A DNA stretch of 64,000 nt from Hyaloraphidium curvatum SAG 235-1 (GCA_025558095.1 JAIVFI010000013.1:1-64000); one strand, 5' to 3'. Numbered from the stretch's first letter, positions 16,309 to 34,231 are shown. Notes: generated from the letters alone by a model not told the origin. Numbers and translations are program-made.

Positions 16309-18345
16309 ATGGGCTTCCGTTCGACGCGCTTCGGTCTGGCAAGGGATCGCACCTCCACCTACTTGCCCCCGTCCTTCCACGCCGCGATGGACGCCGCCCT
16401 GGCGCGCCGCCAGATCTGGGAAACCGTTTACCTCACCTACGCCCGCGGCATGGACCGTAACCACAACCAGCTGCAGGCAGACTCGTTCTGGGACGAAGGG
16501 GAAGGGGGAGGGAAGGCCGCGATGATGCACAGCGCGAGCTTCCACGGCACGGTGGGCCGCCTCCGATTTGCGCCGGTGGTGGGCTGATTTCGGCGGGCGA
16601 GCAGAAGAAGGAGCTGCTGGGGAAGGGCCTCGGCGGGTTCGAGAAGCTCGTGGGCACCACCAGCGCGGTGTCTCCCACGCGGCCCCTGACCCGGAACCCG
16701 CCCCCGTGCCAGTACCAGCGCATCCGCCACCCGATCCACAACCACTTTATCAGGGTCGACGTCGCGCGCGGCCGCGCCGTGGCCGAGACCTACTTCCACG
16801 ACGGGTACTGGTTCTACTCGGACGAGGCCAACACGCGGAGCAGCAGGGAGCCGGCGCCGGGGATCGGCACGCTCACGGTGCGGGAGCTTGTGGGGCGGTA
16901 TGCGGACGAGCTGGAGCTCAGGGAGGGGAGATGGAAGTTCACGTGGGTTCCTTTCTCCGTGCCGCGTCCGTGCCGTGCTGACGCCCCGCGGCGTGCAGTT
17001 CTCGCACCGTCATGTTCGACTTTTCCCGCATTGACGCCATCCCCGCCTCGCTGCTGCCCGCCGTCGAGCCCTTCGTCTCGGGCTTCAAGCAGGGCACCCG
17101 GCTCCCCAACGGCGAGGGCTCCTTCCTGCGCGACCCCTCCTTCGCCGTTCTCCCCGCCCGCCCGGCGCCGGCCAAGGACGCGGGGGAACTCCTCGAAAAG
17201 GCGCGGATCGAGCAGCTCGTCGCGGTCTGGACGAGGGAGCTGGACAGGTGGCTGATGGCGCCCGGGAAGCTCGAGGCCGAGGCGGGCGGGTACTTTGCCC
17301 CCGGTGCGGCGGTCGAGGACGGCACCACGGCGGCGGTCGCGCCGGCCGAATACGTTGCCAACCTCCGAGCGCAGGCGGGGAGGTTCAAGCTTCTCGACCG
17401 CACCTCGGTGATCAGCAACCACCTCATCCACATGACCGGCCCGGACACGGCCGTGGGCGAGGTCTACATCGACCTGCACCTCGTGGTGCCCGACCTCGCG
17501 GCGTTCAACCCCGCCGAGAGCAACAAGGGCGTCCCCGGCAGGCTGTGGTTCGCGGGCCGGTACGCGGACGAGTACGCCAAGGGAAATGACGGAAAATGGC
17601 GGTTCCTCCGGCGCACGATGATCCAGGATTGGTCGAGGATGGTGCCGCACAAGCGCGGGCTGGCGGCGTCGCAGGCGGGCAGGTTCACCCCCGGCAGCTT
17701 CTCCGACCCCGCCTCGGACCCGTCCGTCGGGTTCCTCCCCACCGCCGACATCCGCGCCCCCGAGATGGCCGACCTCCCCCGGCTCGCGGCGGTCCAGGAC
17801 GCCCTGCACACCTACACCCGCGGCATCGACCGGCGCGACCCGTCGCTGATCACCGCCGCCTACCATCCCGGCGCGTACGACGACCACGGGCCGTACAAGG
17901 GCACCGCCGAGGGGTTCGTCAAGTGGGCTGATGCCGGGTTGGAGGCCATTGAGGGGTGCCACCACGGGATCACGGGGAGCGTGGTGGTGCTCGACGGGGA
18001 GAAGAAGGCGAGGGCCGAGACGAGGGTGGTGGAGAGGGCGTGGTACGGCAAGGACGGGAACGAGAGCGTGAGGTGGTTCGTGGGGAGGTACCTGGACGTG
18101 CTCGAGGAGAGGGAGCAGGGCTGGAAGATCGCGTGGGTGCAACGCAGCGGGCCCGCGAGAAACTGCTGATCCGATCGCGGGGCAGGTCGAGGGTCGTGGT
18201 GCTGGATTGGAGCGTGATCGATCCCGTGGTCGCCAAGCCGACGGAAAAGTGGAAGGCCATGTTCGAGGTCGGGACGAGGGACGCGACGGATCTGGCGGCG
18301 CGGACGCTGGCCAAGCTGGACGAGGGCGGGCCGGCCAAGCTGTGA
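16309..18345 (+). CDS. Protein with three tandem SnoaL/NTF2-like domains and C-terminal AKL (4 introns)
   Basis: Repeated motifs YARGMDR / WTRELDR / YTRGIDRRD and GRYADE..W(K/R)F / GRYLD..WKI. The spliced end is ...DEGGPAKL*. Confidence 0.82.
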
Positions 18346-25421: not shown

Positions 25422-26835
25422 ATGGCTCCCTCCACCCCCGCCCTCTCGGAGCTCTCCATCGGCCCCGCCGACTACCCCTCCGAGGACGACGCCGAGATGT
25501 CGCACGCGTGGAAGGGCAAAGAGCGCGCGCGGATCGATTCCGCCGTGTGCATCGAGGAGGTGGACCGGTGGAGCCTCGGGGAGGGAGAGGGGGAGACGGA
25601 CCCCGCGAGGGCGTTCCCCGTCGAGGTACGCGCTCTCCGCTCCCCGATTTTCCCTCGGGGAAGACGCTAAAATGATGTTCCCGGGCAGGTGTTCCTGCAC
25701 GTGCTCTCGTTCCTGCCCACTCCGCGCGATCTCGCGCCGTGCTTCCGAGCATCGAGGGCGTGGAAGGCCGCGGCGGAGGACAACGGCCTGTGGACGCGGA
25801 TGACCGAGGCGCTGTGGTCGACCAAGGCGTACGTGCCGGACAGGTACCCCGTTGCGCCGCGGTGCTCGGCTGTGCGCCAGCTGATCACGTGAGTGCACCT
25901 CGCTCTGGGTACAGGTTCAGGCAGATCCTCTCGCGGGGCCGGGCCAAGGACGCCTACAGGCTCAGCGTCAGGGACAGCCGGCGCAACTGCATCACCAAGG
26001 AGGAGCTGTGCATGTTCGAGTGGCAGTGGCGGTTCAAGGAGGACGCGGTGCGTTCCTGCAGGATTCGGATGATCGCCCGGCACGCGGCTGATCAGGGTTG
26101 AACCTTCGTGAACGCACAGGGCGAGCACTTCACCGACGAGGACCCGTGGTGGAACGGCCTCCCGCCCCGCGTGCGCATCTTCAACCCCGACGGCTCCATG
26201 AGCGGCACGTTCGCCCGCCCCGACGTCAGCTGGCGCTTCGTCGTGGGTTCCCCCCTCTCGTTCCCACCCCGCACTTGCTTACCGCTCGCCTTACGGGCGA
26301 AGAACAACGCCGAAGGCCGCCGCGGCCGCCCCGGGCGCTTCGTCCGCGTGGGCCCCTACCCGGCCTCGGTGCTCTCGCGGCACTCCAACTGGGGATGGTA
26401 TATGCAATCCGCGTGGACCGTGGCTGCGGCGTTCCCGCTGCCCAAGAAGGTGAAAGCTTCGGGGCTCGAGGGCCGAGGGCGCGGGGCTGATCATTGGGTT
26501 TGCAGGGGACCGACCCCGAGCTGGAGGACAGGAACCTGGCCGTGACCACCGAGACCCAGCGGTTCGAGGTGCTGTGCTGTAAGCTGCCGTGTTCCTCCGC
26601 CCGTCGGTTGGGTTGCTCACTGCCCCGCGCGCCAGACAACTCGGGGCTCGACTACGGCGACGACGAGGTGATGGATCGCCGCGGGTTCGAGCGCGCCAGC
26701 GCGCGAGCGGGGTGGAACATCCGGCTGCTCAGGCGGAGCTGGATCGAGAGCGACTCGGAGGAGGAGGAGGAGGAGGACGACGAAGAGGAGGAGGACGGGG
26801 AATGGAGCGCGCACTCGGGCGAGGCGTCGCGGTGA
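25422..26835 (+). CDS. F-box protein with acidic tail (multi-exon)
   Basis: F-box AFPVE-VFLHVLSFLPTPRDLAPCFRASRAWKAAAEDNGLW; then WQWRFK, FNPDGS, GPYP, NWGW; poly-Glu/Asp tail. Confidence 0.8.
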
Positions 26836-26961
26836 GGGAGTTGGCTCGTGGGTACCGGACTATTGGGTGTTCTCGCAACGTTCTCGGTTCGACAACAGTT
26901 TTGGATTTCGCAAGGCATTTGCCTACTCTTCGGAGCACCAAGTCCAAAGTCCAAAGCCAGC

Positions 26962-27046
26962 GACGCGGACTCCAGCAGACATCCATCAGGCGCGCCCTTC
27001 CCTCTTGGATTCCGGGCGCCCTTCATCGTCCGCCTCCGTCCACGTC
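26962..27046 (-). promoter_or_regulatory. SECIS element (eukaryotic, type 2-like) in the selenoprotein 3' UTR
   Basis: Minus strand: GACGUGGAC..GGCGGAC-G-AUGAA-GGGCGCCC-GG-AA-UCC-AAGAG-GGA-A-GGGCGCGCC-UGAU-GGAU-GUCUGCU..GUCCGCGUC. It has the AUGA/GA core, two paired helices and an apical AA 11 nt after the core UGA. Confidence 0.88.
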
Positions 27047-27076
27047 CATCCTCCTTGCTCCACAAGGCCGGGCCGC

Positions 27077-27719
27077 CTAGCAGCCCTTGGCCAGGGCGCC
27101 CTCGACGGCCGACACGGCCTCCTCGTCCGAGGGGAACCTGTTCTTCCCCTCCTTCTCCTTCTCCATGCCCGACCAGACCACCGTGGCTGTTTCCCCAAGC
27201 CAACAAAACAAAGGCACCACGAACAGGGAGAGAATGAGCCCCGGTCGGTCCGCGCGCGACGCCGCGCTGCCGCCCACCGTTGCACGCCCCCCTCTCCAGC
27301 GACACCTCGAACGAGTGGAACCGCGGCCGCTCCCTGTTCACTGCGACGCGCGCGCCGGGCCAGCGGCGCACCACGGCGTCGCGGACCTTGTCGGCGGCGC
27401 GCGAGAAGGCGCCTCAGGAGTTGCTAAACAGGGGGTGCCATGGGGAATACGGAGAGGCGTTAAACGGGCGCCTAGAAGAGGGCGGCGGGGATTCGCACCA
27501 CCGCTCGATGTGCAGCGACCAGTCCGGCCCCGCGACCGCCTTCTCCGCGAGCGGCGCGGCGCCCTCCGAACCCGCGAGCGGCGCGGGCCCCCCGAACCGC
27601 GGCAGCAGATCCAGCCCGAGCCGCGGCGAAGCCACAAGAAACACAAGGAGCAGCAGCGGCAGCACCACCGCGAGCCGGACGCGCGGCATGGCGCTGCCGG
27701 GGGCAGGGGTCTTGTTCAT
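27077..27719 (-). CDS. SELENOH: Selenoprotein H-like (Rdx family) protein with CxxU; exons 27719-27499, 27423-27278, 27186-27077; Sec TGA 27416-27414
   Basis: Spliced: ..LHIERCNSUGAFSRAADKVRDAVVRRWPGARVAVNRERPRFHSFEVSLERGACNATVVWSGMEKEKEGKNRFPSDEEAVSAVEGALAKGC* (158 aa). Matches the SelH pattern IEHCxxU..VN..PR..SFEV..W(T/S)G..FP on both sides of the TGA; SECIS downstream. Confidence 0.88.
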
Positions 27720-27893
27720 CGGCCTTCGCGGGGAAGGCGAGGCGGTTTCGTCGTCGCACCCAGCGTCGCTCCCATCCCTGATCCCGCCCGTGGAAAACTG
27801 GCATAGCTAGAACGGTTTCTCTCTTCCAATGCGGTACAAGAAGCTCCTCCATCTCCGCACCCCGGTTCCCGCCCTGCCTCCCTCCCGCCGATG

Positions 27894-28946
27894 CTAAACC
27901 TCCATCCACACGACCCCGGGCAACGACCTCCACACCTTCCCCTCCTCCTCGGCTTTGGCCTCCCTCGCCCTCCACTTCGGCAGCACCACCCTGATCCTCC
28001 GCAGCCCGTACCCCGTGAGCTGACCCGCAAGCTCCCCCAACCTGTCCGCGGGCACACAGAGCGTCGGGTTGGCCATCTCCAGCTCCCTCAGCCTCGGCGG
28101 CGCGTCCCCGAGCCCCAGCAGATCCGCCGTCGGGCAGTCCCTCAATATGAGCCTCTCGAGGTGCTCGTGCCGCAGCGCGAGGCCCAGATCCACGTCGCGG
28201 ATCCGCTCCGAGCGCACCTCCAGGCTCTCAAGCCGCAGCCCCGGCAGCGAGACGATCTTGCTCAGCGCGTTGAACTGGTTCCCCGTCGCCGCGTGCCGCA
28301 GCTTGCCCGCCAGCGCGGGGTACTTCCTCAGGTCCTCGTGGTACTCGGATAGCAGCGCCCAGGACCGCAGCCCCGGCGCCTGCTCGAGCACGCGGAGGGT
28401 CGGTGGCGCGCGGGCGAAGCCGTCCAGGTACAGCGACACGTGCTCCACGCTCGGCGGGACCGAGTGCAGGCCCGAGGTGAAGAACTGCGCGGCGTCGGAC
28501 ATGAGGTCCATGTCGATCCGCTTCAGGGAGTCGGAGGAGCGCGAGGCGGCGGCGAGCGCGTTCCAGACCAGGGCGGTGGAGGCGTAGGACGACGAGAAAA
28601 ACTCGAGGTGGCGGACGTGCGGCATCACACCTGCGAGGAAAGCACTGGTCGCGTCCTCGGGGTGCCCCAGATACGTGAGCGCGAGCCTCCTGATGTGCTT
28701 CGAAAAGGCGGCCATCCGGGGGTCGGCGACCATCTTGCCGGGGTCCGCGAAGCTGTTGAGCTCAAAGTGGCGGTACAGCTCCGGCGCGCCGAGGTCGAAG
28801 CAGCGGCGGCTGGCGGTCATGAGCGCGACCAGGGTGCGGCGGTCCCACGCGGCGGCGAGGGTCGCCATGACGTGCAGCAGCAGCTCGTACGGCAGCACCG
28901 GGCCGTCGGTCGCGGTGTCCGCGTCGTCGATAATAGTGTCGCTCAT
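27894..28946 (-). CDS. F-box/LRR-like protein, intronless
   Basis: LPYELLLHVM..LMTASRRCFDLG followed by LxxLxL repeats; paralog of 46181-47334. Confidence 0.75.
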   Translation of the reverse strand: MSDTIIDDADTATDGPVLPYELLLHVMATLAAAWDRRTLVALMTASRRCFDLGAPELYRHFELNSFADPGKMVADPRMAAFSKHIRRLALTYLGHPEDATSAFLAGVMPHVRHLEFFSSSYASTALVWNALAAASRSSDSLKRIDMDLMSDAAQFFTSGLHSVPPSVEHVSLYLDGFARAPPTLRVLEQAPGLRSWALLSEYHEDLRKYPALAGKLRHAATGNQFNALSKIVSLPGLRLESLEVRSERIRDVDLGLALRHEHLERLILRDCPTADLLGLGDAPPRLRELEMANPTLCVPADRLGELAGQLTGYGLRRIRVVLPKWRAREAKAEEEGKVWRSLPGVVWMEV

Positions 28947-29055
28947 TTTAAAACGCGATTTTGTGCCGCGTAACTCGGGGCAAGGCGACCAGGGGCTAAA
29001 GGCAACGGCGTCCAAGGGAACGGCTGCAGAGCAACAACCAAATCTCCAATCCCAA

Positions 29056-30675
29056 ATGGCCCGCGAGCAGCGCCCCTCTGCCCGCCGCAGGCCCCTCCGG
29101 GCGTCCAAGGCGCCCACGATGCGCTGGAAAACCGAGCCGGGCGGACACCCCCACGGCGTGCGGCCCTACGGCAGCCTGCTCCTCTCTTCCAACGCAAAGG
29201 ACGCCCGCGGCCCCGGCCTCGGGACGATGACCGTGCTGCCCGACGAGTTGCTCATGGATACGCTGCTGCCCAACCTGCCGCTGTGGGCGCTGGGCAGGCT
29301 GGCGCAGTGCAGCGGGTTCCTGTACGTGCTCGTGTACCACGACGAATCGTGGCGCCTGCGCCTCCGGGAGGATTTCGGCCCCGCCGCGACGTGGACCTGG
29401 ACAGCGGGCACGTGGAGGCAGACGTACCGCGACGAGCACCTCCGGCGAAAGGGTTTGCACCCCGGTGCCACGGAGGCGCCGATCCGCGTCGGGGGCGTGT
29501 TTTCGGACGACCTGTTCCGGCCGCACTACCTCTCCAAGCTGGTCCTGGGGCAGTTTGTCGGGCCGGGAAACATTCCTCGGCGCTCGGCAAAGGAGATGAC
29601 GGTCTCGCAGTTCGTCGACGAGTTTGCTCGGCCGGGAAGACCCGTGATCATCACCGACCTCGTCGACCAGTGGCCGTGCCGCACAAAATGGACCAAGGAA
29701 TGGCTTCTGGAGCAATTCGGCGGCGACATGATGCGCGCCGAGGCGTTCGACCTCCCGCTCGCCACCTACCTGGACTACAGCGCCCGCTTGCCCCCCTCGT
29801 CCGACAGCCCGCTGTACCTCTTCTCGGCCGCCTTCCCTCCCTCGCTCAAGGAGGACTTTTCCCACCCGCCTTACTTCTCCCCCGACCTCTTGGACCTCCT
29901 CCCCCCCGCCGTCCGCCCGCTCAACACCTGGCTCGTCGTCGGCCCCCGCCGCTCCGCCTCGACCTTCCACGTGGACCCCAACGGCACCTCGGCGTTCAAC
30001 GCGCTCGTCCGGGGCCGCAAAGCGTGGTGGTTCTTCCCGCCGGACCGCGCGCCGCCGGGGGTGTACAAGAGCGAGGACGGGGGCGAGGTGACGGCGCCGA
30101 GGACGCTGCTGGAATGGCTGACCGACTTCCTGGAGGGCGCCCGGGCGGATCCGGGGTCGGGGATGGCGGAAGGCGTGTGCGAGGAGGGGGAGTGCGTGTA
30201 CGTTCCCGGGGGGTGGTGGCACGCCGTGCTGAACCTCGAGGACAGCGTCGCGCTGACGCGCAACTTCTGCGCCCCGCCGGACCTGTTCGGCGTCCTGGAG
30301 TTCTTCAGGTCGAGGCACGCTCACGTGTCCGGTGTGGCGGCGCTGGACGAGGAGGACTCGACGGGGGAGATGACGCGGGGTAACAACGTGTACGGGGGTT
30401 GCACAGTGAGCTCCAAGGTGGACATGTACGAGGAGTTTGGGCGGGTGCTGCGGGAGAAGGAGCCGGAGCTGTGGAGGGCGTGGGAGGAGCACGAGCGCGC
30501 CAGGGAGGCGGGGAAGGGGGAGAAGAGGAAGGCGGCGGAGGGGCTGTGGAGGTCGCTGGGCAAGGTGGCCAGGGCCGAGGAAGGCAACGGGGTGCAGGAC
30601 ACGGCGGCGGGTGCGTTGACGGGCGGGTTCTCTTTTGGGTTCGTGGCCGACGGCGACGAAGGGGAGGAGCAATAG
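29056..30675 (+). CDS. F-box + JmjC domain protein (JMJD6-like)
   Basis: LPDELLMDTLL F-box; RPVIITD, PLYLF, STFHVDPNGTSAFN (HxD), GRKAW, VPGGWWHAVLNL. Confidence 0.92.
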   Translation: MAREQRPSARRRPLRASKAPTMRWKTEPGGHPHGVRPYGSLLLSSNAKDARGPGLGTMTVLPDELLMDTLLPNLPLWALGRLAQCSGFLYVLVYHDESWRLRLREDFGPAATWTWTAGTWRQTYRDEHLRRKGLHPGATEAPIRVGGVFSDDLFRPHYLSKLVLGQFVGPGNIPRRSAKEMTVSQFVDEFARPGRPVIITDLVDQWPCRTKWTKEWLLEQFGGDMMRAEAFDLPLATYLDYSARLPPSSDSPLYLFSAAFPPSLKEDFSHPPYFSPDLLDLLPPAVRPLNTWLVVGPRRSASTFHVDPNGTSAFNALVRGRKAWWFFPPDRAPPGVYKSEDGGEVTAPRTLLEWLTDFLEGARADPGSGMAEGVCEEGECVYVPGGWWHAVLNLEDSVALTRNFCAPPDLFGVLEFFRSRHAHVSGVAALDEEDSTGEMTRGNNVYGGCTVSSKVDMYEEFGRVLREKEPELWRAWEEHERAREAGKGEKRKAAEGLWRSLGKVARAEEGNGVQDTAAGALTGGFSFGFVADGDEGEEQ

Positions 30676-30681
30676 ACGCTG

Positions 30682-31813
30682 CTATTGCGCGTACATGGGC
30701 CCCGCCAGCTCGCTCTCTTTGTGGAGCCGCGCCGTGACGGCGAGATACTCGGGTTCGTTCTCCGGCGTGACTTGTCCGGGGCGTGAGGAGCGCCGGAACG
30801 GCGTGCCGGTGCCACTCACTGAATCCGTGTCGGATGAGGAAGTCGACGGCGATGATGGCGCAGTTAGGCTTGAATCTGCCTGCCCTGACGTCCGAGAGCA
30901 CCTTCACGCGACGGGATCAGACGCGGGAGGCCAAGGCAATGCTGGCCGGACCCACCTCCGGCACCGTGCAGAGCCTGAACCCCGCCACCTCCCCGTCCTG
31001 CGGCACCGGCAGGAAATCCGGCGGCAGCTCCAGGTCGTACACGAACTGCGCCTCGGGCCCGATCCCGTTGTGCCGCGACAGCGTGTTGTACGTCACCGCG
31101 CCCACCGGCCGCGCCTTTTCCGCCAGCCACGCCGGGATTCCGGCTTCTTCCTCGCACTCCCGCACCATGCACTCGCCGGGGGTCTGGTCGTACGGGATGC
31201 CGCCGGCGACGGTGTTGTCCAGCATCCCCGGGAACGTCTGCTTGGTCGGCGAGCGCTGCGCGACCCAGATCCTCATCTCGGATTCCCGCACGAAGCACGT
31301 CAGGTGCGCGCCAAAGGTCCGTATGCCGAACAGCTCCGCTCCCGACCGCTCGATGGTCATCACCATGTTGCGCGCGAGCTTCCTCGCCCCCGACGCGGGC
31401 GCGATCCCGTCCGACTCGAGCCCGTCGTGGTACGCCACGCTCGGGTCCCCGTAGACGGGGTACCGCTCCTCCCTCCACCCGCGGAGGCACGGGAACGCGT
31501 CCGTTGCGCGCCAGTGCCGCAGCAGCGCGTCCATCGCTTTCGTCCTCCTGAGGAAGCCCATGGTGCCCTCGGGGTCGAGCTCCACGGCTTCCATGTAAGG
31601 CGACGAGGAGGGGTCGTCGGGAATGGCGTAGATGAAGCTGAACTCGGTCTCCTCGGACGACTCGGCCAGCTCCATGAGCGCGGGCACGACAAAGTCCGGC
31701 ACGAAGCCGACGTGGCACCCGGCCACGTGGAACGGGAACGCGGTCCGCTTTTGGACGGCATCGGCGGGGTCGAACGAGTCGCAGGCCGCGACGAGCTCGA
31801 GCAGGGTCGGCAT
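30682..31813 (-). CDS. Nudix hydrolase (YJR142W/NUDT19-20-like), 2 introns near 3' end
   Basis: GWREERYPV, IERSGAELFG, WVAQRSPTKQTFPGMLDNTVAGG, RECEEEAG, YDLELP..PQDGEV, FKPNC. Confidence 0.92.
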
Positions 31814-32616
31814 CTTGCGGGTAGCGTCGGTTTGTTTACGTGGGCCGTGGCGGTGCACGCTGGGCGACCCCTTCCGTGGTGTCTGCGGGGCTCAAACTCG
31901 CCTCGGACGGAATGAGATACCATTGTGGAAGGTGCCGAAGTCACCTTCGACGGCTTTCGCTTTCCTGGTTGGTTGCGGACTAGCAGATCCGTGACGTTGA
32001 GTAGGCGCGAGGTCAGAAGCCAAGCTCTATCGGCTCTTTCGCACGAAAGGGTGATCCGGGCTGATAGATGGCATCACTCAATCACACAGAATGTCTCTGG
32101 AAGGCACAAGGGGCTCTCTTGCTGTGTCCGAGTGAACCGCTCCGTGGGGACTTGGGCGCCCTTCGGGCGCTGGCTGTGCTGGAATTGGAAGGCGCCCGCG
32201 GCCACGGCCGACCGCCAAACCGGCCGATGACAGGGCCGATGGAGTCTGCCGGTGGTGGCCATCGAGCGGCCGGGCCTCGGATGGCGCAGACGAGGCGCAT
32301 CGGGGCAAGAACCAGGGGACCGGCTAATCGGGCGCACAACCGCTCCCCAGCCCGCTGACGTCGAGAGTTCCGGATCACACAGCTCCCTGGCCCGTGCGGG
32401 GCAGATCGGGGCCGCAAACTCGACCCCAGGCCGTGAGCCTGATGTCCAGGGCCATTTGCGATTGCTTTGTGGTCCCCGCCGGCAACTGGTCGACGCTGCG
32501 GATAGTGCGGTTAGGCGGTCCAGGCTCGCGGCGCAGGTGGGTGCGTAAGCGATCCCTAGAAAACCGGCCCTGTCCCTTCGCCGCGGGAACTTTCAACCAA
32601 CTTCACTCCGTCCGCG

Positions 32617-34231
32617 ATGGGCAACGGGCCGTCGAAGAAGGCGGCCGGATCGGCGCCCGCGCGCACGGTCGAGCACGCGGCGGGGCTCGCCCTCGCGCAC
32701 GGCCGCCACCGGCGCGCGCAGTACCGCGCGGTGTCGCTGCTGGGCGCGGGCGCGCAGGCGACGGTGCGGCTGGCGACCCGCGGCGACGGCGCGCTGTACG
32801 CGCTCAAGACGTACTACAAGGAAGACGGCGGCGCGAGCAGCCGCGGGGCGGCGAACGAGCTCGCCGTGCGCAACAAGCTGAAGGCGCTCGGGCACGCAAA
32901 CCACCCGCACATCGTGCACCTCGTCGAGGTCCGCGGCAATTCCGTGTTATTTTATTCCGTTGGCTCACGGCTATGCCCTCCCCCAGAACTTTGTGGCCGA
33001 GGACCGGACGTACTTTGTGTTCGAATATGCCCCGGGCACGGTGGGTCCCCCTCCGTTCCTGCGCCCGTTGTCGACCCGAGCTCACCGGCCATCGCCTTTG
33101 CAGGACCTTGCGCAGTGCCTGCAGGCCCGCGGCGGCGTGCTGCCCGAGTGGGAGGCCCGCCGCATCATCGCGAGCGTGCTCGGCACGCTCTCCTTCCTGC
33201 ACTCTGTCGGCATCGTCCACCGCGACGTCAAGCCGGCAAACATCCTCGTGCGCGACCCCGCCCGCCTTGCAGAGACGCTGTGCCTCACGGACTTTGGCGG
33301 CGCCCACGTGTCGGACTCGCCGAATCCGGCAAACATCACCTCGGGCCTGCCCTCCTTCGCCACCTCGCGCTCCCTGGCCAAGGCCATGCAGTCGTGCGCG
33401 GGGACGCCGCTGTACCTGCCTCCCGAGATCGTGCTCGGCCTCGCGTACGACCACAAGGTCGACTCGTGGGCTACGGGCTGCGTGTTGTGGAACCTCCTTT
33501 TTGGCGCCTCCCCCTTTGAGCACGGCCTGGCCTCCTTCGACGAGCTCTACGCCCGCATCATGAAGGCCTCGCTCGACTTTCCCGACGGCGGCGCCTCGGA
33601 GTCGTGCCGCTCCTTCCTCCGCGCGCTGCTCGACCCGGACCCGTCGCGACGCCCCTCGTGCGCCGAGGCCCTGGACCACTCCTGGCTGCACGAGCCCGAG
33701 CCGTGGGCCACCCCGCCGCCGACCCCCGTGGCGGCGCCGATGGACTTCCGCGCCGCGCTCTCCCTCCTCGATGCCGCGCAGCTGGACGCCATGAACGCCA
33801 CCCTCGTCGGCGGCGCGTGGGACGGCAACCTGCGCCGGACCGACTCGGGGTACCAGAGCAACGGCAGCCAGGGCAGCCCCGTGCAGGGCGATACGCCCTA
33901 CGCCGCGGCCGGACACAGGAACTCGCTGCACTCGGTGAACTCGCACGGCGAGGGGGGGCAGACGCAGTACCAGCAATCCTACACGCAGGGGATGGCCTAC
34001 CCGCAGCAGGACTTTTCGCAGCAGCAGCAGCCGTGGTACCCCCAGCCGGAATCCCTGCCGCGGATGCAGTATCCGCAGGACCAGTTGTACGCCGGCGCGT
34101 ACCAGCAGCAGCAGGTCGCGGAGCACTACGGGTACCAGCAGCAGCACCCGGACCACATGTACGCCCCGGCGGGGGCCTGGTTCTCGCCGCCGAGGATGCC
34201 GCTGCAGGGGGGGGCGTATGCCGCCAGCTGA
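32617..34231 (+). CDS. CAMK-like Ser/Thr kinase, copy 5, with MG N-terminus and Q/Y/P-rich tail
   Basis: MGNGPSKK, LGAGAQATV, YALK, HRDVKPAN, DFG, GTPLYLPPE, RTDSGYQS. Confidence 0.9.

What the first reader, a model, noticed from the sequence alone, without database searches (positions are those of the whole stretch)
26962..27719. Hidden selenoprotein: SelenoH-like gene with CxxU, in-frame UGA and a 3' UTR SECIS
Seen: the ORF track breaks this locus into meaningless pieces. Removing two GT-AG introns (27498-27424, 27277-27187) gives a 158-aa frame with IERC-N-S-[TGA]. SelH-like motifs continue past the TGA (VN..PR..SFEV..WSG..FP), and a SECIS-shaped hairpin starts ~30 nt after the TAG. Known: Rdx-family selenoproteins carry Sec in CxxU and need a SECIS; most fungi lost Sec, but a few early-diverging lineages keep it. 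Inference: this organism recodes UGA as Sec, and standard annotation would truncate or miss the gene.
Basis: partly seen in the sequence, partly recalled or inferred. Interest (0 to 1): 0.95.

Follow-up and report, generated by a model that had tools for sequence, protein, structure and literature searches.

The report
Mis-annotated SelenoH-like selenoprotein gene in a chytrid-relative fungus
This is very probably a real three-exon gene of the early-diverging fungus Hyaloraphidium curvatum for a small redox protein that carries selenocysteine at an in-frame UGA; the public annotation splices that part out, but selenoproteins of this kind are already known in a few early fungal lineages.

Summary
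On the minus strand, three exons (27719-27499, 27423-27278, 27186-27077) joined by two GT-AG introns give 158 codons. They contain C-N-S-TGA, with the Cys codon rebuilt across intron 1.

- **Coding past the TGA:** third-position GC is 0.90, 0.98 and 1.00 in the exons. It is about 0.6-0.7 in the introns and the 3' UTR.
- **SECIS:** a type-II SECIS-shaped hairpin (AUGA, 11 nt, AA, mini-stem, UGAU) lies 31-115 nt after the TAG. My descriptor scan expects 0.55 such sites per 128 kb.
- **Sec machinery:** the genome has tRNA-Sec (78 bits), SepSecS, an SPS with G-TGA-GCKV plus a SECIS, and a SelW with CGA-TGA plus a SECIS.
- **Organism and annotation:** the organism is Hyaloraphidium curvatum (Monoblepharomycota). 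GenBank annotates the locus as a 118-aa hypothetical protein (KAI9023901.1). Its enlarged 165-nt intron removes 30 codons, including the TGA.
- **Family:** the evidence is weaker. NCBIfam SelT/W/H hits the C-terminal half below threshold (E 0.0099), Pfam Rdx gives nothing, and protein-atlas neighbours are Rdx. The N-terminus is hydrophobic, not the basic nuclear type of SELENOH.
- **Not done:** no RNA reads could be obtained. The joined spliced model was not searched or folded.

Verdict: a new member of a known kind, of moderate interest. First-stage notes of this scan also flag other selenoprotein candidates elsewhere in this genome.

The parts
27499..27719 (-). Exon 1: ATG (27719; second ATG at codon 11) to ...H-I-E-R + TG. 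It encodes a hydrophobic N-terminal segment, a linker and the strand preceding the redox motif.
   Evidence: Translation. GC by codon position is 0.80/0.54/0.90. The GenBank model KAI9023901.1 shares this exon from M11.
27630..27674 (-). Hydrophobic core L-A-V-V-L-P-L-L-L-L-V-F-L-V-A (residues 16-30), preceded by M-P-R-V-R. It is signal-peptide or signal-anchor like.
   Evidence: Kyte-Doolittle 15-residue maximum is 3.2. No signal-peptide predictor was available, so localisation is inferred.
27424..27498 (-). Intron 1: 75 nt, GT..AG, phase 2, splitting the Cys codon (TG|C). It is in frame and free of stops if retained.
   Evidence: Sequence. GC is 0.63 and there is no third-position bias, 0.48/0.72/0.67. 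The donor GTGCGA resembles GTG[ACG]GT donors of HSP70, SepSecS and SPS introns in this genome. It is not confirmed by RNA.
27278..27423 (-). Exon 2: C|AAC TCC TGA GGC..., giving C-N-S-Sec-G, then helix, strand and strand (...RPRFHSFEVSLERGACN).
   Evidence: Translation. GC3 after the TGA is 0.98. AlphaFold2 of the 45 post-TGA residues gives H2-17, E22-29, E34-40 with mean pLDDT 79.5. The three nearest ESM Atlas clusters all carry Rdx, best score 0.87.
27414..27416 (-). In-frame TGA: proposed selenocysteine codon (residue 77 from the first ATG) in Cys-Asn-Ser-Sec.
   Evidence: The frame continues with GC3 28/30 across the surrounding 30 codons.
27187..27277 (-). Intron 2: 91 nt, GT..AG, phase 1.
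   Evidence: The same intron is used by the independent GenBank model. There is no codon-position bias.
27077..27186 (-). Exon 3: ...TVVWSGMEKEKEGKNRFPSDEEAVSAVEGALAKGC, then TAG (27079-27077).
   Evidence: Translation. GC3 is 1.00. TIGR02174 aligns FEV-to-end with profile positions 43-73 of 74. An Rdx cluster is second in the atlas search at 0.88.
26962..27046 (-). 3' UTR hairpin with type-II SECIS features. It has AUGA (27026-27023), an 11-nt 5' strand forming a 9-bp helix II with one bulge, and unpaired AA (27011-27010). These are followed by a 3-bp mini-stem, UGAU (26988-26985) and a lower helix.
   Evidence: Fold -57.8 kcal/mol, z -4.2. It is one of 2 descriptor sites in the window and the only one in 26500-28000, against 0.55 expected per 128 kb. 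The SelW and SPS SECISes of this genome share AUGAAG, 11-12 nt, AA(A), mini-stem and CUGA. Rfam SECIS_1 did not report it.

Best explanation
Window 27719-26962 (minus strand) is a three-exon nuclear gene of Hyaloraphidium curvatum. It encodes a 158-residue selenoprotein of the thioredoxin-like Rdx group (SelW/SelT/SelH). The protein is closest in layout to SelenoH.

Splicing of intron 1 rebuilds a Cys codon, so a beta-strand (W-S-L-H-I-E-R) runs straight into Cys-Asn-Ser-Sec. The UGA at 27416-27414 is read as selenocysteine by the cell's tRNA-Sec. This is directed by a type-II SECIS hairpin in the 3' UTR, about 300 nt downstream on the mRNA. Translation then continues for 81 more residues (helix, two strands with the FEV motif, strand W-S-G, R-F-P, C-terminal helix).

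The Cys-x-x-Sec pair would act as a selenenylsulfide/thiol-selenol redox centre. The N-terminal hydrophobic segment suggests targeting to the secretory pathway or a membrane rather than the nucleolus.

Shown: the sequence anatomy, the coding signal past the TGA, the SECIS shape, the Sec machinery and two other selenoprotein genes in the genome, and the mis-modelled public annotation. Inferred: the splicing, actual Sec insertion, redox function, localisation and the SelenoH subfamily.
For: - **Anatomy.**
- **Codon-position GC.** Third-position GC is 0.90/0.98/1.00 in the exons and about 0.6-0.7 in introns and UTR. The GC1>GC2 pattern is that of the sense strand.
- **Disputed 30 codons.** GC3 is 28/30, P about 2e-4 to 2e-3.
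- **SECIS.** Fold z = -4.2. The descriptor gives 2 sites per 128 kb against 0.55 expected by chance. That is roughly 1e-3 for a site within 300 nt after a given stop codon. The architecture matches the SECISes after SelW and SPS in this genome.
- **Machinery.** tRNA-Sec 78.2 bits with a TCA anticodon. SepSecS 198.9+64+27 bits. SPS with LKG-TGA-GCKV. SelW with VYCGA-TGA-G. A weak PSTK hit.
- **Family.** TIGR02174 'SelT/SelW/SelH family' is the only NCBIfam hit to the FEV-to-C-terminus part: E 0.0099, 16.1 bits, the correct profile region 43-73/74. This is higher than the equivalent piece of a Pfam-confirmed Rdx paralogue, 13.3 bits.
- **Spacing.** Sec to FEV is 35 residues, as in this genome's SelW.
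- **Atlas neighbours.** Both exon pieces have Rdx clusters among their nearest ESM Atlas neighbours.
- **Predicted structure.** The post-TGA piece folds as helix-strand-strand at pLDDT 79.5.
- **Splice sites.** The donors fit this genome's introns. Intron 2 and the intron 1 donor are shared with the GenBank model.
- **Literature.** SelenoH was found as a selenoprotein in all the Sec-using fungi examined except Gonapodya prolifera, the chytrid among them, where only a fragment like its C-terminal domain was seen (10.1101/314781).
Against:
- Pfam Rdx gives no hit on any piece, on the public protein or at this locus in the six-frame genome search.
- TIGR02174 is far below its cut-off (16.1 against 34.2 bits), and no hit was obtained for the N-terminal half of the domain.
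- phmmer of the 45-aa piece against 1.84 billion proteins found nothing at E<=0.001.
- BLASTP against this genome's SelW and Rdx paralogues is not significant.
- Rfam SECIS_1 does not report the hairpin even in a 151-nt search.
- The N-terminus lacks the basic RKRK/AT-hook region described for SELENOH (PMC10650576).
- eEFSec and SBP2 were not identified.
Confidence: 0.8

Rival explanations
1. The gene is a real Sec-containing Rdx-fold protein but not a SelenoH orthologue. It would be a separate, secretory or membrane-anchored Rdx subfamily, or a divergent SelW/SelT-type member.
For: - The N-terminus is hydrophobic and signal-like, not basic or nuclear (PMC10650576).
- No SelenoH sequence could be retrieved for a direct test.
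- The profile hit is to the generic SelT/W/H model only.
Against: - The layout is as I recall it for SELENOH. This means an N-terminal extension of about 70 residues, C-x-S-U, a basic stretch before S-F-E-V, and W-x-G...F-P-x-x-x-E near the C-terminus. That recollection is a lead, not a test.
- There is no long hydrophobic insertion of the SelT type.
- It has no significant similarity to this genome's SelW.
- SelenoH was present as a selenoprotein in four of the five Sec-using fungi first described (10.1101/314781).
Confidence: 0.3
2. The GenBank model is right. The TGA-bearing 90 nt are part of a 165-nt intron, and the product is a 118-aa protein without selenocysteine. The hairpin after the stop is then fortuitous.
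For: - A public gene model exists with GT..AG borders and an open frame.
- 165 is a multiple of three, so both forms are in frame.
- No RNA data were available here.
Against: - The excised 30 codons have GC3 28/30, unlike introns of this gene, which are 0.5-0.7 at every position.
- The model deletes the CxxU motif and the first helix of the fold.
- Gene predictors cannot read through UGA, and such flaws are described as widespread in public vertebrate selenoprotein annotations (PMC12822975 title and abstract).
- A SECIS-shaped hairpin at the right place has a chance expectation of about 1e-3.
Confidence: 0.07
3. The gene is decaying or truncated. The TGA is a true stop, giving a 76-residue product or a pseudogene.
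For: TGA is normally a stop codon. Intron 1 is in frame and stop-free if retained, so an unspliced reading also ends at this TGA (ORF 27414-27719).
Against: - The coding signal is intact for 81 codons after the TGA in the same frame, across a second intron.
- The Rdx-type motifs lie downstream of the TGA.
- A SECIS and the Sec machinery are present.
Confidence: 0.03

Closest known systems
Fungal SelenoH selenoproteins of Sec-using early-diverging fungi (Bifiguratus adelaidae and Harpellales; Mariotti et al., bioRxiv 10.1101/314781, later Nat Microbiol 2019)
   Same: Both are small proteins with Sec at an in-frame UGA, in a fungus that keeps the eukaryotic Sec machinery. In that work only a C-terminal-like fragment was seen in the chytrid Gonapodya prolifera. 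This gene is complete.
   Different: The species is different, and the accessible literature does not name it as having this gene. I could not align the two, because no sequences were retrievable. Here the SECIS-shaped hairpin is canonical, whereas that study found SECIS elements for only 5 of 16 fungal candidates.
Animal SELENOH (14-kDa nucleolar Rdx-family oxidoreductase; PMC10650576)
   Same: Both have a Cys-x-x-Sec motif after a beta-strand, an FEV-type motif and a short thioredoxin-like domain preceded by an N-terminal extension. From memory, C-x-S-U and W-x-G...F-P also match.
   Different: The N-terminus here is a hydrophobic signal or anchor rather than RKRK/AT-hook. Orthology was not tested.
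SelW of the same genome (G000 C43:206.9-207.2 kb, L002)
   Same: Both belong to the Rdx family, have CxxU with TGA, and have the same 35-residue spacing from Sec to FEV. Both have an intron close to the redox motif and a type-II SECIS with AUGAAG...AA(A)...CUGA.
   Different: SelW has no N-terminal extension, reads C-G-A-U, and passes TIGR02174 (44.6 bits) and Pfam Rdx. Pairwise similarity to the present gene is not significant.
SelT (ER-membrane Rdx selenoprotein)
   Same: Both have an Rdx fold with CxxU and an N-terminal signal sequence, and both would be associated with the secretory pathway.
   Different: SelT has a long hydrophobic insertion within the fold (my recollection). This protein has only about 17 residues between the first helix region and FEV.

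Membership tests
Eukaryotic selenoprotein gene | In-frame UGA with the coding frame continuing downstream | tested here: met
   The TGA is at 27416-27414. There are 81 further codons with GC3 0.98-1.00, against 0.6-0.7 in introns and UTR.
Eukaryotic selenoprotein gene | SECIS element in the 3' UTR (AUGA / unpaired AA / GA quartet, helix II of the right length) | tested here: inconclusive
   My descriptor and the fold are met: AUGA, 11 nt, AA, mini-stem, UGAU, z -4.2, 0.55 chance sites per 128 kb. Rfam SECIS_1 gives no hit. It scores the SelW and SPS SECISes of this genome at only 15-18 bits, against a cut-off of 35. SECISearch3 was not available.
Eukaryotic selenoprotein gene | Sec machinery in the same genome | tested here: met
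   tRNA-Sec at 78.2 bits with anticodon TCA. SepSecS. SPS with G-U-G-C-K. PSTK is weak at 22.7 bits. eEFSec and SBP2 were not identified.
Eukaryotic selenoprotein gene | Selenium actually incorporated; mRNA spliced as modelled | not testable with these tools
This needs RNA-seq or RT-PCR, 75Se labelling or mass spectrometry.
Rdx family (SelW/SelT/SelH/Rdx12) | Cys-x-x-Sec (or Cys) directly after the first beta-strand | tested here: met
   W-S-L-H-I-E-R-C-N-S-U after removal of intron 1. The feature is as described in PMC10650576.
Rdx family (SelW/SelT/SelH/Rdx12) | Conserved tGxFE(I/V) motif downstream | tested here: met
   F-H-S-F-E-V lies 35 residues after Sec, the same spacing as T-S-K-F-E-V in this genome's SelW. 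The Gly position is not kept in either.
Rdx family (SelW/SelT/SelH/Rdx12) | Profile match over the curated threshold (Pfam PF10262 / NCBIfam TIGR02174) | tested here: not met
   Pfam gives no hit on the pieces, on KAI9023901.1 or at this locus. TIGR02174 gives 16.1 bits, E 0.0099, against a cut-off of 34.2. It covers the C-terminal half only, but at the correct profile positions, and is the only family listed. Only fragments could be scored, so the test is handicapped.
Rdx family (SelW/SelT/SelH/Rdx12) | Thioredoxin-like fold (strand, CxxU, helix, strands, helix) | tested here: inconclusive
   The post-TGA piece is predicted as helix-strand-strand at pLDDT 79.5. Foldseek on this 45-aa fragment found no match at E<=0.001. 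The joined model was not folded.
SELENOH subfamily | Basic N-terminal nuclear motif (RKRK) / AT-hook, nucleolar localisation | tested here: not met
   The N-terminus is M-P-R-V-R followed by a 15-residue hydrophobic core. There are 7 K+R and 5 D+E in 73 residues. The feature is as in PMC10650576.
SELENOH subfamily | Sequence or phylogenetic grouping with known SelenoH, with Sec aligned to Sec | not tested
No SelenoH sequence could be fetched by a tool. Searches with the pieces were blank.

The most novel reading that the evidence does not exclude
Hyaloraphidium curvatum makes a SelenoH-like Cys-x-x-Sec oxidoreductase that is sent into the secretory pathway or anchored in a membrane by an N-terminal signal. 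This would be a fungal Rdx selenoprotein subfamily with a different cellular role from nucleolar SELENOH. It would also make this genome one of the richer fungal selenoproteomes, alongside SelW and SPS checked here and the TR and DsbA-like candidates that first-stage notes flag.
Probability: 0.3. Interest if true: 0.55.

Novelty: new member of a known kind. Interest (0 to 1): 0.45.

Why it matters
Fungi were long thought to lack selenoproteins. Since 2018/2019 a handful of early-diverging lineages have been known to keep them.

This locus adds a complete Rdx/SelenoH-like selenoprotein gene with a textbook-shaped SECIS in Monoblepharomycota, where the first fungal survey saw only a fragment in Gonapodya.

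It also corrects a concrete GenBank record (KAI9023901.1), whose model cuts out the catalytic motif to avoid the UGA.

The clear SECISes here (SelH-like, SelW, SPS) could help train SECIS detection for fungi. The original survey could assign an element to only 5 of 16 candidates.

The apparent signal peptide raises a testable question about where this redox protein works.

Tried and rejected
**Steps that could not be run**
Junctions and the TGA base call are therefore unverified by reads.
- All searches used exon pieces by reference, or the public protein P0121, which joins the last 17 codons of exon 2 to exon 3.

**Searches that came back blank**
- Pfam on the three exon pieces and on P0121.
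- Pfam Rdx across the genome in six frames: it hit only the C20 and C43 loci.
- PDB sequence searches.
- The search for homologous proteins with the 45-aa piece: no shared words.
- phmmer against 1.84 billion representatives: 0 hits at E<=0.001. A 45-aa query has little power there.
- The search for related loci: the 45-aa piece is too short. The metagenome scan with P0121:60-118 found no relative.

**Comparisons that led nowhere**
- Two related uncultured organisms were reached through the neighbouring NUDIX gene (Logan contigs L015, L016). Neither shows a syntenic copy.
- BLASTP against this genome's SelW and CxxC-Rdx is not significant.
- Foldseek on the 45-aa fragment model gives only non-significant matches, as expected for helix plus hairpin.

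**SECIS modelling**
- Rfam reports no SECIS_1 hit on this hairpin.
- A genome-specific SECIS covariance model failed. MAFFT could not align the three SECISes structurally. A model built from the SPS element alone found only itself.

**Machinery not resolved**
- The best hit of the bacterial selB model is a mitochondrial IF-2-like GTPase, so eEFSec remains unidentified.
- The L7Ae-domain search lists eight matches at six places but does not single out SBP2.

**Literature**
- Supplements of the two key papers are not held, and PMC6551623 is not held. I could not see whether H. curvatum is among the 11 Sec-encoding genomes of Amses et al.

Full report
**Observation.** Every stated feature is present on the minus strand.
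- The ATG is at 27719, and a second ATG lies at codon 11.
- Exon 1 ends ...H-I-E-R followed by TG at 27500-27499.
- A 75-nt GT..AG intron (27498-27424) is followed by C|AAC TCC TGA. Splicing therefore rebuilds a Cys codon, and the product reads I-E-R-C-N-S-[TGA at 27416-27414].
- The same frame continues for 45 codons to 27279. A 91-nt GT..AG intron follows (27277-27187), then 36 codons to TAG (27079-27077).
- The exons sum to 477 nt, which is 158 residues plus the stop.

**Does the frame stay coding after the TGA?** The genome is about 68% GC with a very strong third-position bias.
- In the proposed frame, GC by codon position is 0.80/0.54/0.90 in exon 1, 0.71/0.58/0.98 in exon 2 after the TGA, and 0.58/0.44/1.00 in exon 3.
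- Intron 1 read in the continuing frame gives 0.48/0.72/0.67. Intron 2 and the 3' UTR are flat at about 0.6-0.7.
- The GC1>GC2 pattern is that of sense strands of other genes in the window.
- The signal switches off and on at the proposed borders, and persists through the TGA.

**Splice sites.** Introns inferred from HSP70, SepSecS and SPS in this genome are 50-100 nt. Most begin GTGGGT, GTGAGT or GTGCGT, and they end CAG or TAG. The donors here (GTGCGA, GTGGGC), the acceptors (TTTAG, AACAG) and the lengths fit that pattern.

**SECIS.** The 117 nt after the stop fold at -57.8 kcal/mol. The z-score is -4.2, and none of 200 shuffles folded as well.
- The structure is a long hairpin spanning 27046-26962.
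- It contains AUGA (27026-27023), then an 11-nt 5' strand that forms a 9-bp helix II with one bulged G.
- Unpaired G-G-A-A follows (AA at 27011-27010), then a 3-bp mini-stem, then UGAU (26988-26985) and a lower helix.
- A simple descriptor of my own (AUGA, AA 9-13 nt later, a GA partner, at least 8 stacked pairs with at most one bulge) finds this site and one other in the whole window on both strands. It expects 0.55 sites per 128 kb in Markov-simulated sequence. Chance placement within 300 nt after a given stop is therefore about 1e-3.
- Rfam's SECIS_1 model does not report it. The same model gives only 15.3 and 18.3 bits, against a threshold of 35, to the SECISes after this genome's SelW and SPS genes.
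- All three elements share AUGAAG, 11-12 nt, AA(A), a mini-stem and CUGA.

**Sec machinery and other selenoproteins in the genome (G000: 31.9 Mb, 55 contigs).**
- tRNA-Sec scores 78.2 bits, has anticodon TCA and is followed by a T-run.
- SepSecS is found as three consecutive exon matches.
- SelD/SPS carries an in-frame TGA in L-K-G-[TGA]-G-C-K-V, the canonical Sec site.
- A SelW gene reads V-Y-C-G-A-[TGA]-G, then an intron, then a TIGR02174-positive domain.
- A weak PSTK match of 22.7 bits is present.
- eEFSec and SBP2 were not identified. The best selB-model hit is an IF-2-like GTPase, and the L7Ae search was not discriminating.
- First-stage notes of this scan also list a thioredoxin reductase and a DsbA-like candidate elsewhere in the genome. 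I did not check these.

**Organism and public annotation.**
- The neighbouring NUDIX gene is 93% identical to a GenBank protein of Hyaloraphidium curvatum. More distant hits are other fungi.
- The locus itself is annotated as KAI9023901.1, locus tag DFJ74DRAFT_705645, a 118-aa hypothetical protein. It is 100% identical over the shared parts.
- H. curvatum belongs to Monoblepharomycota, Hyaloraphidiomycetes.
- The public model starts at the second ATG. It uses the same donor at 27498 and the same intron 2, but an acceptor at 27335-27334. This makes a 165-nt intron that removes the 30 codons N-S-TGA...V-N-R.
- Those 30 codons have GC3 28/30. The exceptions are the TGA itself and one GCA. P is about 2e-4 to 2e-3 against intron-like composition.
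- The public model therefore deletes the redox motif and the first helix.

**Family.** This is the weakest part, because only fragments could be searched.
- Pfam finds nothing on any piece or on the public protein. Its Rdx model does not ring at this locus.
- NCBIfam TIGR02174 ('SelT/SelW/SelH family') is the only family reported for P0121:60-118. It gives E 0.0099 and 16.1 bits, and aligns S-F-E-V...A-V-E to profile positions 43-73 of 74.
- That score is below the cut-off. It is at the right place, though, and higher than the equivalent piece of the Pfam-positive CxxC Rdx paralogue on C20 (13.3 bits).
- The distance from Sec to F-E-V is 35 residues, exactly as in this genome's SelW.
- ESM Atlas neighbours of the post-TGA piece are three Rdx clusters (best score 0.87). 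An Rdx cluster is second for exon 3 (0.88). These are leads only.
- AlphaFold2 on the 45 post-TGA residues gives helix 2-17, strand 22-29 and strand 34-40 at pLDDT 79.5. This is the order expected after a CxxU at the N-terminus of a helix in a thioredoxin-like fold.
- Rdx features (Cys-x-x-Sec, tGxFE[I/V]) and SELENOH features (14 kDa, RKRK, AT-hook, nucleolar) are taken from PMC10650576.
- The closer likeness to SELENOH than to SelW or SelT rests on my memory of the human sequence. It covers the N-terminal extension, C-x-S-U, the basic run before S-F-E-V, and W-x-G...F-P-x-x-x-E. It is a lead, not a test.
- Against SELENOH membership, the N-terminus is M-P-R-V-R plus a 15-residue hydrophobic core with Kyte-Doolittle 3.2. 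That is a signal peptide or anchor rather than a nuclear motif. A first-stage note records the same point.

**Literature.**
- Mariotti et al. (10.1101/314781) found eukaryotic Sec machinery in five non-Dikarya fungi.
- They found SelenoH as a selenoprotein in all of them except Gonapodya prolifera, the chytrid among them. There only a fragment like the C-terminal domain was seen.
- They could assign SECIS elements to only 5 of 16 candidates.
- Amses et al. (PMC9457484) state that Sec is encoded in 11 early-diverging fungal genomes across several phyla. The held text does not say whether H. curvatum is one of them.
- No held paper links Hyaloraphidium to a SelenoH gene.

**Verdict.**
- This is very probably (about 0.8-0.9) a genuine Sec-encoding gene of the Rdx group, mis-modelled in GenBank.
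- Assignment to SelenoH proper is about even odds or a little better.
- Missing are RNA evidence for the junctions, a full-length alignment and tree, and biochemical proof.

Noticed in passing
L002 (G000 C43:205487-208675), gene about 1391-1731 +, SECIS 1786-1849: SelW selenoprotein gene. It reads M-S-S-S-S-K-V-T-V-H-T-V-Y-C-G-A-[TGA]-G, then an intron right after the Sec-Gly, then a TIGR02174-positive domain (44.6 bits). A type-II SECIS lies about 55 nt after the stop (Rfam SECIS_1, 15.3 bits, sub-threshold).
   Followed up: partly
L008/L009 (G000 C2:989453-993439, minus strand); SECIS at L009:1174-1112: Selenophosphate synthetase with an in-frame TGA in L-K-G-[TGA]-G-C-K-V. A SECIS follows (AUGA, 12 nt, AAA, a UUCG-capped mini-stem, UGAU; Rfam 18.3 bits, sub-threshold).
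   Followed up: partly
L004:1501-1587 (G000 C14:445030-445115 +): tRNA-Sec gene, 87 nt, anticodon TCA, 78.2 bits, followed by a T-run.
   Followed up: yes
L003 (G000 C20:442963-443380 +): A Cys-form Rdx gene (F-Y-C-P-K-C-K-W ... V-V-L-W-D-R-K-A-A-G-G-F) split by a short intron. It has no TGA at the motif.
   Followed up: partly
window 21344-21292 (minus): The second site that passes my SECIS descriptor (8-bp helix II). It lies antisense to a protein-kinase coding region and is probably chance, given 0.55 expected per window.
   Followed up: partly
window 28588-30672 (+), 30920-31891 (-), 32882-34228 (+), 16982-18166 (+): The neighbours are unrelated eukaryotic genes: a JmjC/cupin hydroxylase, a DUF4743-NUDIX protein, a protein kinase and a SnoaL-like protein. 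None has an obvious functional link to the selenoprotein gene.
   Followed up: partly
L015 (Logan SRR26194948) and L016 (Logan SRR23967301): These contigs come from two uncultured relatives whose NUDIX orthologues are 67-69% identical to the window's. They show no syntenic SelH-like gene. They could be mined for Monoblepharomycota-like selenoproteins.
   Followed up: partly
L019:1336-3147 (G000 C3:473438-475249 +): The best match of the bacterial selB model is a 604-aa GTPase with an IF-2 domain, probably mitochondrial IF-2. It is not eEFSec, which remains to be found.
   Followed up: partly
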